Below, one piece after another: positions 4,562-61,304 of a DNA stretch of 64,000 nt. The notes under the pieces are model-generated. The model was not told where the DNA came from and made no database searches. It saw only the letters and a program-made list of their open reading frames with translations. Numbering within the stretch: position 1 is the stretch's first letter; every line of letters starts with the position of its first letter. The stretch lies in the NCBI GenBank assembly GCA_020137815.1, contig CM035350.1, forward strand, positions 1 through 64,000. Direction: 5' to 3'. Source of the stretch: Hormiphora californensis. Its lineage: Eukaryota; Animalia; Ctenophora. Made by a program: the position numbers and the translations under genes.

Positions 4562-5521
4562 CTACTGTGTCCCCGAGGAGACCTCCACCACCTCGCCCTT
4601 TTTGATCCTAAACGACTTCCCAGGGCTCCGCTCCTTCTCCTCTTTCAACTTTTTCACAAGGACCGCCCGAGCCGCTCTCTCCTCAGAAGTAAGGTCGGGA
4701 GAGATATAAACTCGGGAAAACACTTCACTCTCTCTAAGTCGTGTCTTCTTACCAAGAATACACGACTGCATCTCCTTACTTGTCAGGGTTAACTTCAGGG
4801 GTCTAGTCTGACCTGCTGAAAATCTCCCCAACCGCTGAGCACGTTTCACAAGAGGTTTCTCCGCGAGTGTTGTCCACAGCTCCGGTAACAGTTCCTCGCT
4901 GTCTCCAGGACTGTCAGTCAGCCCGTGGATGACAATATTACACGACCTATCCTCGCTTGCTGCAGCAACAGCCTTCTGGATCCTACTAGGAGCCAAGGCT
5001 GTCTCGCATTCCCTCTTTAACGCAGATGAGAAGCTATGAATCTCCTCTTTTGCAATAGTCTGTACCTCTGTAATCACTTCCTCTCTCTTCTCCAAGAGCT
5101 GCTCCTGCAGTTTAAGTAACTGCTCCTGGGCACCAACTAGTGCCTTCTGGGCGGAGATAAGATCCTCCTGACGCTCTATGAGCTTCTTCTCTATCTCACT
5201 GCACTTCCTAGCTTCATTAAACTGGCTCCTCATTACAGGGAACAACCTCTCAACCAACAACTTGCCAGTCATCTCCACCCACGCAACTAAATCATTTTTA
5301 TCCACCTTATCTAATTTGTACTTAGAGGGGGCAGATAAAGTGTCCCATAAACTCTCCTCTGCACCATTATACTCTGCACTAAACACGCCCGTGGTGGGAC
5401 GTGCTCCAGCCATCGCAAATAGTTCCTCTATCATCTCCACAGTTTCTACATGTACATTTTCCAGCTCTGAGTCACTAATTGACTTGTTGCCACTAACCAA
5501 GACTCTAGGACTCACACTCAT
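4562..5521 (-). CDS. LINE ORF1-like protein (coiled coil plus RRM-like C-terminus), 319 aa, in an ORF1-only element (about 4379-5610)
   Basis: Motifs RSCNIVIHGL, RLGRF, RPLKLTL and VYISPDLT are typical of invertebrate CR1/L2-group ORF1. Intact and intronless, with (GA)n on both sides and no ORF2. Confidence 0.75.
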   Translation of the reverse strand: MSVSPRVLVSGNKSISDSELENVHVETVEMIEELFAMAGARPTTGVFSAEYNGAEESLWDTLSAPSKYKLDKVDKNDLVAWVEMTGKLLVERLFPVMRSQFNEARKCSEIEKKLIERQEDLISAQKALVGAQEQLLKLQEQLLEKREEVITEVQTIAKEEIHSFSSALKRECETALAPSRIQKAVAAASEDRSCNIVIHGLTDSPGDSEELLPELWTTLAEKPLVKRAQRLGRFSAGQTRPLKLTLTSKEMQSCILGKKTRLRESEVFSRVYISPDLTSEERAARAVLVKKLKEEKERSPGKSFRIKKGEVVEVSSGTQ

Positions 5522-5601
5522 AACGGTGAAAAGTGACCGTTACAACTATAAAGATAAGAGACGGCCGATTTTCAATGCACAAGCGATAAGAACAAGCAAG
5601 A

Positions 5602-6446
<845 letters not shown>

Positions 6447-6449
<3 letters not shown>

Positions 6450-7010
6450 GTTGGTTTCACCTAGTCTTGGACTAGTTCTCTTGACAGTACTAACAAGACA
6501 ATCCACAAACCGAGTGCTTGAGGAGTGAGAACTGACCCCGTCGACGACAGACACTATGACCGATTTTCAGTCCTTCGGGGCGTGCTCTTATTACCCTTTC
6601 TTTTGCATCCCCTGCATGTTTTAATCTTGACACTGTGCGAAGAACAGAGTCTCGCTAGCTTTATACTTTTTTCGGCTTCACGTACTTCCTACACACGTAT
6701 CCGTGTCGGTCAACTCAGACTGTCTGTCTGATGTGATCGTGATCACTGGTCGGCATCCCGTCTTACTCCCCAGGATGTAGGGATCTAGAACCAGCCCAAA
6801 TCCCTTCCATAGTTCTGCCCCTCTTCCCGATCTCAAACTGAAATCTTACACTTTTCAAAATCCCTTTATATCTGAAGCGTTGACAATATGGTGGTACTGA
6901 GCACCTACGTCTCCTTCGGGTCTTTCATATAAATATTATAATAACACGGTGCCGACAGTAGCTGGCTGCTTAGTGGCTATACCGTAATCCTACCAAACCA
7001 AACCAAACCA
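6447..7010 (+). mobile_element. Probable retroposed fragment with an (AAACC)3 tail between two (GA)n tracts
   Basis: Ends ccaaaccaaaccaaacca|gagagag. No recognisable coding motif. Confidence 0.4.
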
Positions 7011-7018
7011 GAGAGAGA

Positions 7019-7152
7019 GGGGGAGTTGGTCCACCTGCCACCACCTCCAATCGGTTTCCCCCGGGCAACGGGGTCACACGGAGTACCTTTTTCCCCATCC
7101 CCTTTTCCCCCTGTTCGATTTCCAGGTCCGTGTGGCCGCGGCTGAGCGTGGC
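7019..7152 (+). ncRNA. HDV-like self-cleaving ribozyme (predicted)
   Basis: P1 GGGGGAG(7019-25)/TTCCCCC(7056-62); P2 GCCAC(7037-41)/GTGGC(7148-52); P3 ACC/GGT with loop TCCAATC; P1.1 CC(7047-48)/GG(7063-64); P4 GGTCACACGGA/TCCGTGTGGCC; J4/2 GGCTGA with candidate catalytic C7142. Confidence 0.75.
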
Positions 7153-7429
7153 TGTGTATCAGAAATACGGAAAAAATCAGAAAATACAAAATACAAAAAC
7201 ATCTTCTTGGCTAGGCGGCCCACAGTGTATCAACGCCAACTACTATTTTCCTACTCCGCCTTCTCCGCCCTCCGGCTCAGGGTTACCAGTGGAACAGGCA
7301 TCTTCCAGCCAACTGTGGACCCCCAACGCCCCTTTATCCACTAACCCACTAACCAATACTGTTTTTGTTCTACTAACGCCCCTAACCCACTTCTTCCATT
7401 TAGAGGGTTCTACCTTGGAGATGATCCAT

Positions 7430-7765
7430 TGGAACGGGGTGGCTTCCTTACTGGAACGGGGTGGCTGTCCTCTCTGGAGCGGGGTGGCTGTCCTCTCTGG
7501 AGCGGGGTCAGCTGTCTTTACTGGAGCGGGGTCAGCTGTCTTTACTGGAGCGGGGTCAGCTGTCTTTACTGGAGCGGGGTCAGCTGTCCTTACTGGAACA
7601 GGGTCAGCTGTCTTTTCTGGAGCGGGGTGGCTGTCTTCTCTGGAGCGGGGTCAGCTGGCTTCTCTGGAGCGGGGTCAGCTGGCTTTTCTGGAACGGGGTC
7701 AGCTGGCTTCTCTGGAACGGGATCAGCTGGCTTCTCTGGAACGGGGTCGGCTATCTTCTCTGGCT
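7430..7765 (+). repeat. 21-24 bp minisatellite (GGAGCGGGGTCAGCTGTCTTTACT); longer array at 58931-59480
   Basis: Direct tandem units, internal to both copies of the non-autonomous element. Confidence 0.9.
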
Positions 7766-7887
7766 CGACATGTAATCATCATCCATTTGTATAAATTATT
7801 ATCTTTTTCACTGCATTTGGTCAGAGCTCCCTAATCTCTGTTCTGCTTGCGAATCTCTCTAATTGTGAGATATCTATCTCTCCTGCT

Positions 7888-8856
7888 ATGAGCGGTAGTA
7901 CAGCCTCTGCTTGTAGTTTCAAAGACCGGCTGAGAGTGTATAGCGATGAAAGGGTACAGAGAAGTGTTTATGGTGAAGTGCAGGGCGAGCTATTTGACCT
8001 GGTACGGGACCTATTTTCACATGCTGGTATTAAGGATTCCTTCCCGAAGAGTTTGACTGCCGGTCGTAGTGTGTGGGACAGCTTGAAGTGTCCGACTAAG
8101 AGTAAGATCAAGGGGATTAAAAAGCCTGAACTAGAGGATTTCACGGAGAAGGTTTGTCGTTTCCTAATGGAGAGGTGTTACCCGCTGCTTGACCGCCTGA
8201 GTAACGAAGTTGAGGACAGTGAGAGGAGGCTATTGGATGGCCAAGAGGAGCTGATTGCTTCTCAGCGAGCACTGGTGGAGGCCCAGGGACAGCTTGTTAA
8301 ACTGCAGTGTGAATTGTTAGAGAAGCGGGATAAGGAGATAGCTGCGGTACAGTCCACAGCAGAAGAGGAAATCAAGACCTTTTCTTCTGTTCTCAAGAAG
8401 CGGTGTGACACAGCCCTAGCTCCGAAGAGAATCAGCACAGCAATTAGCAGTGCAACAGAGGACAGGATGAGCAATTTGATTGTCCATGGGTTGGATGATT
8501 GTAAAAGTGAAAACAACACCGATTTGGAGTTGGATGTTAGGCGCCTGTTTGATAAAATGGGCGAGTGTACTACCAATGTTTGGGGTATGGAGCGTCTCGG
8601 TAGGTTCAAGGAGGGTACTAACCGACCAGTCAAGCTGCGTTTGAGTGACCGGAATTTCCAAGATCGGGTTCTATCCAGCAAGAGTAGTCTGAAGAACTCT
8701 CAAGATTACAAGGATATTTACATATCCCCTGATCGTTCACCAGAGGAGAGAGAGGAGAGGAGGAAGTTGGTTTCTGAGCTGAGGGCGAGGAAGGAGGAGG
8801 AACCTGGGAAGACCTTTGGAATCAGAGGAGGCAAGGTGGTGGAGGTGATGATTTGA
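7888..8856 (+). CDS. LINE ORF1-like protein, 322 aa, in an ORF1-only element (about 7803-10098)
   Basis: Motifs RMSNLIVHGL, RLGRF, RPVKLRL and IYISPDRS; a clear but divergent paralog of 4562-5521. The element ends in an (ATT)n tail near 10087-10100. No ORF2. Confidence 0.75.
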   Translation: MSGSTASACSFKDRLRVYSDERVQRSVYGEVQGELFDLVRDLFSHAGIKDSFPKSLTAGRSVWDSLKCPTKSKIKGIKKPELEDFTEKVCRFLMERCYPLLDRLSNEVEDSERRLLDGQEELIASQRALVEAQGQLVKLQCELLEKRDKEIAAVQSTAEEEIKTFSSVLKKRCDTALAPKRISTAISSATEDRMSNLIVHGLDDCKSENNTDLELDVRRLFDKMGECTTNVWGMERLGRFKEGTNRPVKLRLSDRNFQDRVLSSKSSLKNSQDYKDIYISPDRSPEEREERRKLVSELRARKEEEPGKTFGIRGGKVVEVMI

Positions 8857-9052
8857 GTGTGTGGGCGTGTGTGTGGGACTGATGATAGGTTTTGTTACCG
8901 GATTTTTTGAGCATCAGAGCACAGGACATTTAACTGGATTATTATAGACATTACAACTTATTATATTTTTTAGGGGTTTGCAGCTAAGGTGAACCGCTCT
9001 GATGCTCTGTGTTACTAGGGTTTTTTAGATTCTAGTATTCTACAGGTAATAA

Positions 9053-10050
9053 GGGAATTTTAGTAAAAAAAGGGCCAAGTTTTCAGCAAAATTTTTAACA
9101 AGCTAATTTCTTCACCAATAGGTCCGGATATGTGTCTAGTATCACCAAAAAAGTACACGATAATCGGAAGTGCGCATGCGCGCTGAGCGCGCAAGAAGTA
9201 AATACATGTATTTCTAGCCTGGCACGAAAACCCAAAAACCATCTTAGGAGACGAGTAGAGAAAAAATCAAGGGCACTAGATTGTGTAGCGTCCTCGCATT
9301 AGTGGGGGTAGGTGCTGGAATTAAGTCTCTATCTCATCTGGTTAATTAGATAATTGGATAATTAGATATGCGCATAACCGTATTTTGGCTATATGGCTAT
9401 AGCCACTTAGGAATGGTTTAGAGACTTTTCATTGGTGCCATTTTGTTCAGAAGAAAATTTCAATCTAAGAGTTGTGGAAAAATTTTGAGCCTATCTCTTA
9501 CGGTTTTGGCGTTATTTGCGGTCAAAGTATGCCAAATCAGTCGAAAATGCCAAAAAGTTAGTTAATTGGCCTTCTTTGACCGCAAATTACGCCAAAACGG
9601 TAAGAGATAGGCTCTAAATTTTTCCACAACTCTTAGATTGAAATTTTTTTCTGAACAAAATGGCACCAATGAAAAGTCTCTAAACCATTCCTAAGTGGCT
9701 ATAGCCATATAGCCAAAATACGGTTATGCGCATATCTAATTATCCAGTTATCTAATTAACCAGATGAGATAGAGACTTAATTCCAGCACCTACCCCCACT
9801 AATGCGAGGACGCTACACAATCTAGTGCCCTTGATTTTTTCTCTACTCGTCTCCTAAGATGGTTTTTGGGTTTTCGTGCCAGGCTAGAAATACATGTATT
9901 TACATGTGTTTACTTCTTGCGCGCTCAGCGCGCGTGCGCACTTCCGATTATCGTGTACTTTTTTTTGGTGATACTAGACACCTATCCGGACCTATTGGTG
10001 AAGAAATTAGCTTGTTAAAAATTTTGCTGAAAAAATATACTAAAATTCCC
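9053..10050. mobile_element. About 1-kb palindromic foldback MITE (PIF/Harbinger-like ends)
   Basis: GGGAATTTTAGTA...TACTAAAATTCCC with TAA on both sides. Arms of about 490 bp are nearly perfect. The internal module recurs at 39120-39460 and 52320-52780. Confidence 0.75.
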
Positions 10051-10439
10051 TAACTAAGGGTCTGAGCGTGTATACAAATGCTGATATTATTATTATTATT
10101 TTTCGCTCGAACCCGTTCCTGCTTGTTTTAGGCTGCCTTAGATTCAGACGGTTTGCTTCTTCAGTTCCTGATAAGTTGTCTCTTCTTAGAATTCATTGTA
10201 GCAGATTGGGCTTTGCAGATAGTTTAGGAGGTCTTGTGCTCCGTCACCATGAGCTTTAATCCCACTTTACTTCCCCCTTTTTAATATCATCCCCTTTACT
10301 TAACCCATATGTACATTGTTAAATTTACCCGTATGTACATTGTTCTACCTACTCTACCTTTACTCCGCAGGCCCTCCGGGCCCTCAGATCCAACAGGATC
10401 CGGGTCCGGGGGATTTAACCCTGCTCTCGCATGGGGCCT

Positions 10440-10521
<82 letters not shown>

Positions 10522-10724
10522 GTGTGAGAGAGAGAGAGAGAGAGAGATAAAGATAGACATATTGAAGGATAACAATTAACAATTAACGAGATATGCCGTT
10601 AATTATGGCAGTAGTCTTATTGTGTTACCCCCGTGACACCACATGGGCCCGGGCATCCAAACTAATTTATTTAATTGGTTTTTGGACTAAATTTACAAAT
10701 ATAGAGTTTTAATAAAACGATATA

Positions 10725-22980: not shown

Positions 22981-61304
<38,324 letters not shown>

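What the first reader, a model, noticed from the sequence alone, without database searches (positions are those of the whole stretch)
7019..10443. Ribozyme-headed non-autonomous retroelement associated with (GA)n microsatellites
Seen: two copies (7019 and 57698) begin exactly where a (GA)n tract ends, with a sequence that folds into a complete HDV-like double pseudoknot. The predicted cleavage site 5' of G7019 coincides with the microsatellite junction. The element continues through about 280 nt and a minisatellite, then joins the last codons (LDM*/LDL*) and 3' UTR of the R4-like LINE at 5720-6412. Copy 1 ends at (GA)n. Known: HDV-like ribozymes release the 5' ends of R2/R4-type elements from read-through transcripts, and internally deleted R2 'SIDE' parasites exist at rDNA. 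Inference: this is a promoterless, SIDE-like parasite of a microsatellite-specific R4/Dong element, an arrangement I do not recognise as described.
Basis: partly seen in the sequence, partly recalled or inferred. Interest (0 to 1): 0.85.

Follow-up and report, generated by a model that had tools for sequence, protein, structure and literature searches.

The report
Ribozyme-headed (GA)n-targeting non-autonomous retroelement
This is a short, protein-less jumping gene that borrows the enzymes of a larger relative to insert into (GA)n repeats. It carries that relative's self-cutting-RNA-like head, so it is a new example of a trick already known from insect and worm elements, not a new kind of system.

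Summary
Window 7019-7160 is the 5' head of a young repeat family: about 115 heads genome-wide, at least 35 of them identical. All 30 fetched copies start at the end of a (GA)n tract, and all 21 complete ones end in (GA)n.

The canonical element is 1.1-1.65 kb: head, 24-nt minisatellite, then the last codons and 3'UTR of a LINE. Full-length partners of about 5.85 kb exist, also flanked by (GA)n. They have intact 1227-1243 aa ORFs (RT, CCHC, restriction-like endonuclease) and share the head (93-100%) and the terminal 115 nt (92-96%).

The head fits an HDV-like double pseudoknot. Support comes from compensatory changes between two head variants and a second family with 60% amino-acid identity.

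Self-cleavage is unproven. Rfam finds nothing, and family 1 lacks the usually conserved G in L3.

Window copy 1 carries a 2.3-kb nested insertion (7810-10085) and lacks its last 33 nt. Copy 2's head is split by an 821-bp MITE.

The parts are already described: Dong/(TAA)n and R4 ribozymes, R2 SIDEs, L1Tc relatives. This is therefore a new member of a known kind, probably in a ctenophore. R4/Dong clade membership was not testable.

The scan found the same head before on other DNA of this genome.

The parts
5610..5719 (+). (GA)55 target tract upstream of the LINE fragment
   Evidence: TRF
5720..6412 (+). 5'-truncated copy (last 92 codons plus 3'UTR) of the autonomous (GA)n-specific RLE LINE. It ends with the canonical terminus followed by (GA)n.
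   Evidence: 98.6% identical to the tail of full-length element L047. 84% identical to L035 positions 5173-5866. The translation contains the RLE motifs.
6413..6447 (+). (GA)17 after the LINE fragment
7010..7018 (+). Short (GA) remnant directly upstream of copy 1
7019..7160 (+). Head with the HDV-like ribozyme fold. P1 7019-7025/7056-7062; P2 7037-7041/7148-7152 (+7028-7034/7154-7160); P3 7043-7045/7053-7055; L3 7046-7052; P1.1 7047-7048/7063-7064; P4 7072-7081/7128-7137 (+7069-7070/7139-7140); putative catalytic C7142.
   Evidence: 100% identical in at least 35 genome copies. 115 model hits genome-wide. Fold. Pair counts. Descriptor versus shuffles.
7161..7429 (+). Spacer derived from the LINE 5'UTR
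   Evidence: 81-89% identical to the autonomous 5'UTRs
7430..7763 (+). 24-nt minisatellite, about 14 units here. Copy number varies between copies, giving elements of 1.1-1.65 kb.
   Evidence: Matches the master's 5'UTR 24-nt minisatellite only in reverse orientation, 72-75%.
7764..7809 (+). Junction: last codons (LDM, stop) and the first bases of the LINE 3'UTR
7810..10085 (+). NOT part of the element. Nested insertion of another retroelement: an ORF1-like gene at 7888-8856 and a ~1-kb foldback at about 9020-10050. It is flanked by a ~15-bp duplication of the AT-rich host site.
   Evidence: Absent from canonical copies. ORF.
10086..10443 (+). 3' tail (LINE 3'UTR homologue). This copy lacks the last 33 nt, including the 3' half of the terminal hairpin.
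   Evidence: At least 40 genome copies at 94-98% identity. Terminus comparison.
10444..10547 (+). (GA)52 downstream target tract
57698..57742 (+). Copy 2, head positions 1-45, preceded by (GA)n at 57656-57697
57743..58563 (.). NOT part of the element. An 821-bp terminal-inverted-repeat element inserted in the ribozyme of copy 2, with a CCG target duplication.
58564..59567 (+). Copy 2, remainder: head positions 43-142, spacer, minisatellite, and the first ~60 nt of the tail. It is then truncated and joined to a 236-bp duplicate of 55312-55547.

Best explanation
The finding is a SIDE-like non-autonomous retrotransposon. It is parasitic on a family of (GA)n-specific non-LTR retrotransposons that encode a restriction-like endonuclease (RLE).

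Shown:
- The canonical element (for example L028:1501-2640) has no ORF. It consists of a 142-nt head, about 220 nt of 5'UTR, a variable 24-nt minisatellite, and the last codons plus 3'UTR of the LINE.
- It occurs in roughly 100 or more dispersed copies, always in one orientation inside (GA)n.
- Full-length partners of ~5.85 kb carry one ORF with two N-terminal helical repeats, RT, a CCHC knuckle and an RLE. They share the head and the last ~115 nt.

Inferred mechanism:
1. Copies are transcribed as part of host or read-through transcripts.
2. The head folds into an HDV-like double pseudoknot and cuts just 5' of the G-run. This releases an RNA that starts at the microsatellite/element junction.
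3. The structured 3' end (terminal hairpin plus a conserved GUGCGUGUA motif) is bound in trans by the LINE protein.
4. That protein nicks (GA)n and copies the RNA by target-primed reverse transcription.
5. Variable numbers of G at the 5' junction arise when the cDNA end is joined.

Window copy 1 is an old, damaged insertion (nested element, terminal deletion). Copy 2 is a dead one.
For: Copy number and identity.

Target specificity: 30/30 upstream and 21/21 downstream (GA)n for the short element. Most full-length elements have (GA)n at both ends.

Autonomous partners: at least 15 intact ORFs of 1227-1243 aa. RVT_1 domain. The nearest solved structures are R2 proteins, E 1e-29. The CCHC and KPD...D...EK..KY motifs align to the R2 endonuclease.

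End-biased conservation between the short element and its masters: head 93-98% (100% to L032/L033/L034); spacer 81-89%; proximal tail 74-77%; terminal 115 nt 92-96%.

Fold: all 9 differences between head variants A and B lie in unpaired positions, except G52/C121, which changes together to A/U. The family-2 head (60% aa family, L048) keeps P1, P3, P1.1, J4/2 and P2 and has a completely different but 11-bp P4. Model R1, built from family 1, finds family 2 at E 9e-10.

Pair counts: 93% of cells paired versus 34-48% when the structure is slid. 10 pairs have double changes (4/500 shuffles reach this). Covariation score 0.25 versus 0.12 (0/500).

3' end: consensus fold of 43 pairs, 9 with compensatory changes, shared by the short element, family 1 and family 2.

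Junction G-run: variable, 5-10 G. This is expected where cleavage is at the element's 5' end (PMC3774820).

Precedent: Dong/(TAA)n and R4 ribozymes cut at the junction in vitro (PMC3774820). R2 SIDEs are described (PMC3414825).

RNA: the head is present in marine metatranscriptome assemblies from several studies. The deepest contig starts one letter before 7019.
Against: - No cleavage data exist.
- Rfam's HDV-type models give no hit even at E<=10.
- The nested MFE of the family-1 head is no better than shuffles (z = +0.57).
- Family-1 L3 (UCCAAUC / UCCUAUC) has no G at the position that is conserved in R2-type ribozymes. A G-to-A change at that position accompanies inactivity in the sow-bug element (PMC3774820). 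The role of G25 in HDV itself is from my own knowledge.
- The cleavage-site pair is G-C rather than the G.U of HDV.
- Effectively only three independent lineages underlie the covariation, and alignment A5 was fitted to the model.
- One full-length copy with an intact ORF (L036) has A in place of the catalytic C.
- Contig ends cannot prove RNA ends.
- No sampled master has a tail more than 85% identical to the short element's tail overall.
Confidence: 0.75

Rival explanations
1. The head is a conserved structured 5' RNA element with a non-catalytic role. Candidates are a binding site for the element's own protein (as the R2 5' RNA is), a translation-initiation element, or an internal promoter at the DNA level. 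In this reading the 5' ends are set by transcription initiation, and the HDV-like drawing is partly coincidental.
For: No Rfam hit. Family-1 L3 lacks the conserved G (PMC3774820). The loose descriptor is matched by chance about 4 times per window. Covariation shows only that an RNA structure is kept, not that it cuts. HDV-like folds are also proposed to act as IRES-like elements (PMC6765202).
Against: The full set of HDV-like features sits in the right order and spacing, at the exact first base of the element. This holds in two families whose P4 and distal P2 sequences differ completely. The C-N-R-A junction is kept in variants A, B and family 2. An upstream promoter is impossible, because upstream is always plain (GA)n. 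The relatives Dong and R4 are proven cutters at the same place (PMC3774820).
Confidence: 0.17
2. The short copies are dead internally deleted LINE copies multiplied by DNA-level processes such as segmental duplication or microsatellite-mediated recombination. They are not a trans-mobilised family.
For: Copy 2 in the window does sit inside a local 236-bp duplication. Minisatellite length varies between copies.
Against: Copies lie on all 13 large contigs, each with its own flanks. 5' junction G-counts are variable but the 3' terminus is uniform. The same rearranged structure appears in every copy. 5'-truncated and full-length LINE copies show the same insertion signature.
Confidence: 0.04
3. The HDV-like fold is a chance match in a G/C-rich 5'UTR and has no structural role.
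For: The MFE z-score is not significant. Descriptor matches without the P4 condition occur at chance level.
Against: Only 0.05 hits per window are expected with P4 of 8 bp or more. There are compensatory changes. The head is more conserved than the adjacent 5'UTR.
Confidence: 0.04

Closest known systems
Dong of Bombyx mori, and R4 of Ascaris (R4 clade RLE LINEs)
   Same: A single-ORF RLE LINE inserted in a simple repeat or repeated gene. An HDV-like ribozyme sits at the very 5' end and cuts at the element/target junction. This was shown in vitro for Dong with a (TAA)7 leader (PMC3774820).
   Different: The target here is (GA)n, not (TAA)n or 28S. The host is probably a ctenophore. The N-terminus has two helical repeats and no C2H2 finger. 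Family-1 L3 lacks the conserved G. Clade membership is untested. A numerous non-autonomous derivative exists here.
R2 SIDEs of Drosophila (PMC3414825)
   Same: Short elements made of the master's 5' ribozyme joined to its 3'UTR. They are propagated by the master's TPRT machinery and have variable 5' junctions.
   Different: R2 SIDEs sit in 28S rDNA, are rare, and are simple 5'/3' joins. This element is dispersed in microsatellites and outnumbers its master. It carries a variable minisatellite that is inverted relative to the master's 5'UTR repeat.
L1Tc/ingi-clade elements of trypanosomatids (Pr77 hallmark; PMC4035085)
   Same: A conserved region carrying an HDV-like ribozyme is shared among dispersed members of one retrotransposon clade and releases their RNAs from cellular co-transcripts. 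That the clade's non-autonomous members (NARTc, SIDERs) carry it is from my own knowledge.
   Different: The master there is an APE-type LINE, with no microsatellite specificity and different hosts.
Kibi, (TC)n-specific LINEs of fish (Kojima and Fujiwara 2004, cited in PMC3812793)
   Same: The same microsatellite target, (TC)n = (GA)n.
   Different: PMC3812793 lists Kibi as an APE-type element; its placement in the Tx1/L1 group, and the absence of a reported ribozyme head, are from my own knowledge. The shared target specificity is convergent.

Membership tests
HDV-like self-cleaving ribozyme | Nested double pseudoknot in the order P1-P2-P3-L3-P3'-P1'-P1.1-P4-J4/2-P2', with P1 of about 7 bp starting at the cleavage site | tested here: met
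   All helices can be drawn in family 1 (variants A and B) and family 2. 93% of cells are paired versus 34-48% when the structure is slid.
HDV-like self-cleaving ribozyme | Catalytic C in J4/2 (C-N-R-A context) between P4 and the P2 3' strand | tested here: met
   C7142-U-G-A in variant A, C-U-A-A in variant B, C-U-G-A in family 2. Two copies have A instead: L036 and the decayed L049.
HDV-like self-cleaving ribozyme | P1.1: two L3 cytosines pair with the two G that follow the P1 3' strand | tested here: met
   CC/GG is invariant in all lineages.
HDV-like self-cleaving ribozyme | Conserved G near the 3' end of L3 (G25 of HDV; a conserved L3 site in R2 ribozymes, PMC3774820) | tested here: not met
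   Family-1 L3 is UCCAAUC / UCCUAUC, with no G. Family-2 L3 is GCCCAGU, which has it.
HDV-like self-cleaving ribozyme | Match to curated covariance models | tested here: not met
   No Rfam hit at gathering score or at E<=10. From my own knowledge, Rfam's models cover few retrotransposon ribozymes and cannot encode pseudoknots.
HDV-like self-cleaving ribozyme | Covariation supporting the helices | tested here: met
   G52-C121 changes to A-U between variants. P4 and distal P2 are wholly replaced in family 2. P1 pair 6 changes from A-U to G-C. Only about 3 independent lineages are available.
HDV-like self-cleaving ribozyme | Self-cleavage yielding a 5'-OH product | not testable with these tools
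   Only assembled contigs of RNA libraries were available. One deep contig starts at 7018/7019, but contig ends are not RNA ends.
SIDE (short internally deleted non-LTR element) | Lacks an ORF, but keeps the master's 5' end and 3'UTR | tested here: met
   The head is 100% identical to variant-A masters. The terminal 115 nt are 92-96% identical.
SIDE (short internally deleted non-LTR element) | Amplified as a family, with the master's insertion signature | tested here: met
   About 100 or more copies, the same (GA)n target and orientation, variable 5' junction.
SIDE (short internally deleted non-LTR element) | Derived by simple internal deletion | tested here: not met
   The minisatellite block matches the master's only in reverse orientation. 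The proximal tail is only 74-77% identical to any sampled master.
RLE-encoding non-LTR retrotransposon (R2 group) | RT followed by a CCHC knuckle and a PD-(D/E)xK endonuclease; single ORF; no APE domain | tested here: met
   RVT_1. R2 proteins are the best solved matches. The C-terminal alignment to the R2 endonuclease includes the KPD, DV and EK..KY motifs.
R4/Dong clade | RT phylogeny groups it with R4 and Dong rather than R2, HERO, NeSL or CRE | not testable with these tools
   No reference R4/Dong/HERO/NeSL sequences could be obtained.
R2 clade sensu stricto | N-terminal C2H2 zinc finger(s) plus Myb; 28S rDNA target | tested here: not met
   No C2H2 motif in the N-terminal 320 aa. The target is (GA)n.

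The most novel reading that the evidence does not exclude
This may be the first described pairing of a microsatellite-specific RLE LINE with a highly successful ribozyme-headed SIDE that is dispersed genome-wide rather than confined to rDNA, in an early-branching animal (ctenophore). Its dominant ribozyme variant would work without the L3 guanine thought to be near-essential in HDV-type active sites. If so, it is a natural active-site variant, and evidence that the ribozyme/RLE-LINE partnership dates to the base of animals.
Probability: 0.3. Interest if true: 0.55.

Novelty: new member of a known kind. Interest (0 to 1): 0.4.

Why it matters
It adds a (GA)n-specific, apparently very active RLE LINE and a parasitic short derivative to the known set of ribozyme-headed retrotransposons, in a lineage (probably Ctenophora) where none has been characterised.

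The system offers several practical uses:
- A compact pair of cis elements to study: a 142-nt 5' head and a ~115-nt 3' end.
- A natural test of how much the HDV-type L3 can vary.
- A microsatellite-targeting RT/endonuclease with an unusual N-terminal DNA-binding region, of possible interest to people engineering R2-like insertion tools.

For genome annotation, it explains about 100-200 'HDV-like ribozyme' hits next to (GA)n in this genome. These are transposon heads, not host regulatory devices.

Tried and rejected
- Rfam at gathering score and at E<=10 gave nothing relevant.
- Plain MFE folding is uninformative for family 1 (z = +0.57) and mildly supportive for family 2 (z = -2.1).
- A home-made HDV descriptor without P4 is non-specific, with about 4 chance hits per window. 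The other five window hits (44715, 63523 on +; three on -) have P4 of 6 bp or less. I treated them as chance.
- L031 and L034, which looked like candidate masters because an RT ORF follows the head, are short elements with unrelated LINE insertions or decayed repeats.
- L040 and L041 are 5'-truncated masters, not new heads.
- I looked for relatives in other species to gain covariation. 
- Reads: only assembled contigs of marine metatranscriptomes were available. They show presence in RNA libraries but not RNA ends.
- The N-terminal domain gave a confident AlphaFold model of two helical modules (pLDDT about 90). Foldseek matches to Myb-type domains (RTBP1, Sap1, TRF1/2) are all at E>1, and Pfam found nothing. 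'Myb-like' therefore remains a guess.
- The clade could not be assigned.
Full report
**What is in the window**

G7019 follows a short (GA) run, and G57698 follows a long (GA)n tract plus two extra G. From those points the two stretches are homologous.

The region 5610-10547 is a nest of insertions in (GA)n tracts, in this order:
- (GA)55
- a 693-bp 3' fragment of a LINE (5720-6412)
- (GA)17
- a 562-bp unrelated repeat (6448-7009)
- a (GA) remnant
- the element at 7019-10443
- (GA)52

**It is a large, young family, strictly in (GA)n**

The 142-nt head (7019-7160) has at least 35 perfectly identical copies among 113 candidates in the 110.7-Mb assembly. A covariance model built on it finds 115 heads. 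The tail (10085-10443) has at least 40 copies at 94-98% identity among 227 candidates.

All 30 fetched loci have (GA)n directly upstream. All 21 whose 3' end lay inside the fetched DNA end with the same terminus followed by (GA)n.

The number of G between the last A of the repeat and the AG of the head varies: 5, 6, 7, 8 or 10, with 7 the mode.

Head and tail coordinates pair up into elements of 1.1-1.65 kb, differing in minisatellite length. L028:1501-2640 is a canonical copy.

**The two window copies are damaged**

Compared with canonical copies, copy 1 contains a 2,276-bp foreign insertion at 7810-10085. This is an ORF1-like gene (7888-8856) plus a ~1-kb foldback, flanked by a ~15-bp duplication of the AT-rich site. 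Copy 1 also lacks the last 33 nt of the tail.

Copy 2 has four defects:
- an 821-bp inverted-repeat element at 57743-58563, with a CCG duplication, inside the head
- two point changes, one of them in P3
- a tail that stops at 59567
- a junction there to a 236-bp duplicate of 55312-55547

**Autonomous partners exist**

Some heads are followed by long ORFs. A protein search of the genome found more than 20 full-length copies. At least 15 have uninterrupted frames of 1227-1243 aa.

In the fetched loci, complete elements span about 5.85 kb, and most are flanked by (GA)n at both ends.

The ORF has the following features:
- two conserved ~60-aa helical repeats at the N-terminus
- an RVT_1 domain
- a CCHC motif and a C-terminal region that aligns with the restriction-like endonuclease of solved R2 proteins, including the KPD, DV and EK..KY motifs
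- no APE domain and no C2H2 finger

The 5'UTR of about 1.7 kb holds the head, a spacer, and a 24-nt minisatellite of about 40 units.

A second family (L048, 60% amino-acid identity, two heads in the genome) is also flanked by (GA)n.

The window's fragment at 5720-6412 is a 5'-truncated copy 98.6% identical to the tail of L047. Other 5'-truncated copies exist.

**Relation of the short element to the masters**

| Segment | Identity to masters |
|---|---|
| Head | 93-98%; 100% to L032/L033/L034 |
| Spacer | 81-89% |
| Proximal tail | 74-77% |
| Terminal 115 nt | 92-96% |

Both ends are thus much better kept than the interior.

The short element's minisatellite matches the masters' 5'UTR minisatellite only on the opposite strand, at 72-75% with the same 24-nt period. 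Homology to the master resumes about 9 nt before the stop codon. The element is therefore a rearranged derivative rather than a clean deletion, and may be chimeric.

**The 3' end**

The last ~115 nt fold into a consensus structure of 43 pairs. Nine pairs show compensatory changes across the short element, four family-1 masters and family 2. The structure includes a terminal hairpin with a UYAC loop, followed by a conserved GUGCGUGUA motif.

This is the likely recognition site for the reverse transcriptase. That is an inference by analogy with R2, whose protein binds its 3'UTR RNA (PMC3774820, PMC3414825).

**The head as an HDV-like ribozyme**

The helices listed under 'parts' can all be drawn. 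The evidence beyond drawing is as follows.

(i) Head variants A (the short element and some masters) and B (most intact masters) differ at 9 positions. Seven are unpaired. The other two are G52 and C121, which change together to A and U.

(ii) Family 2 keeps the core: P3 ACC/GGU, the P1.1 CC/GG pairs, the sequence GCUGAG around the putative catalytic C, and the P2 core. Its P4 is different in sequence but has 11 bp, and its distal P2 is also different. P1 pair 6 switches from A-U to G-C.

(iii) Model R1, built from family 1 alone, detects family 2 at E 9e-10.

(iv) On the resulting alignment, 93.2% of cells pair, against 84% in shuffles and 34-48% with slid partners. Ten pairs have changes on both sides; 4 of 500 shuffles reach this.

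(v) A descriptor that includes P4 of 8 bp or more is expected 0.05 times per window.

The caveats are real:
- Only about three independent lineages are available, and the alignment was fitted to the model.
- Rfam gives no hit.
- The MFE is unremarkable.
- Family-1 L3 has U where R2-type ribozymes keep a G. The sow-bug R2, which carries a G-to-A change at this site along with a C-to-A change at another conserved L3 site, is inactive in vitro (PMC3774820).
- Because of the G-run, P1 can form in two registers, so the cut could lie one base further 5'.

**RNA**

Parts of the head occur in contigs of marine metatranscriptome runs from several studies. When laid on 6850-7435, some contigs carry (GA)n upstream. 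The deepest one starts one letter before 7019.

This is compatible with both read-through and processed RNA. However, contig breaks at a multi-copy junction are expected anyway, and DNA carry-over cannot be excluded.

**Host**

The assembly size (110.7 Mb, 45 contigs, 13 large ones) fits the cydippid ctenophore Hormiphora californensis, which I recall from memory. In addition, an 82%-identical protein fragment sits in a Pleurobrachia bachei gene model. The host identity remains unverified.

**Comparison with what is known**

- For Dong, cleavage right after a (TAA)7 leader was shown in vitro (PMC3774820).
- Where cleavage is at the element's end, 5' junctions are variable (same paper), as seen here.
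- R2 SIDEs are ribozyme plus 3'UTR parasites (PMC3414825).
- In trypanosomatids, elements of the L1Tc/ingi clade share the ribozyme-bearing Pr77 hallmark (PMC4035085).
- RLE LINE clades other than R4 also contain microsatellite-specific families, namely HERO and the (TG)n-specific Togen (PMC4640811).
- (TC)n is the target of the APE-type Kibi (PMC3812793).

Each ingredient is therefore described. What may be new is the combination: a (GA)n-specific RLE LINE, an abundant dispersed SIDE with an inverted minisatellite, the host lineage, and the L3 variant.

Two earlier follow-ups in this scan reached the same reading of this head on other pieces of the genome. I count that as agreement, not evidence.

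**Verdict**

Self-cleavage and clade membership remain open.

Noticed in passing
window 7810-10085: A nested retroelement sits inside copy 1. It has an intact 322-aa ORF1-like gene (coiled coil plus C-terminal domain, no Pfam hit) at 7888-8856 and a ~1-kb near-perfect foldback at about 9020-10050. It ends in (ATT)n and has a ~15-bp target duplication. A 39%-identical ORF lies at 4562-5521 on the minus strand.
   Followed up: partly
window 57743-58563: An 821-bp element made almost entirely of two long inverted arms, with a 3-bp (CCG) target duplication, is inserted in the ribozyme of copy 2.
   Followed up: partly
window 55548-57655: An element with ~50-bp terminal inverted repeats and internal 16-nt satellites is inserted in a (GA)n tract. 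It and copy 2 lie between two 236-bp direct repeats (55312-55547 and 59558-59793, 98% identical).
   Followed up: partly
window 6448-7009: A 562-bp repeat ending in (CCAAA)3 lies between two (GA) tracts just upstream of copy 1. Metatranscriptome contigs match it at 90-97% identity.
   Followed up: no
L048:1563-7801 (G000:C8:7406362-7412600): A second (GA)n-specific RLE LINE family, 60% amino-acid identical, has only two heads in the genome. Its 3'UTR contains three ~290-bp tandem units. Its ribozyme L3 carries the canonical G.
   Followed up: partly
L036:1537-1679: A full-length master with an intact 1232-aa ORF has A in place of the putative catalytic C. It is a natural 'dead-ribozyme' copy.
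   Followed up: no
L035:1919-2874: The masters' 5'UTR holds about 40 units of a 24-nt minisatellite with a higher-order period of 313 nt. The short element carries its reverse complement.
   Followed up: partly
P0008 (EukProt EP00116 Pleurobrachia bachei): A Pleurobrachia gene model fuses kinase/SH3 domains with an RT that is 82% identical to this LINE. This is probably an annotation artefact, and it shows that the family is present in a second ctenophore.
   Followed up: no
window 60250-61300: Exons of a RAD50-like gene (C-terminal ATPase part) lie downstream of copy 2.
   Followed up: no
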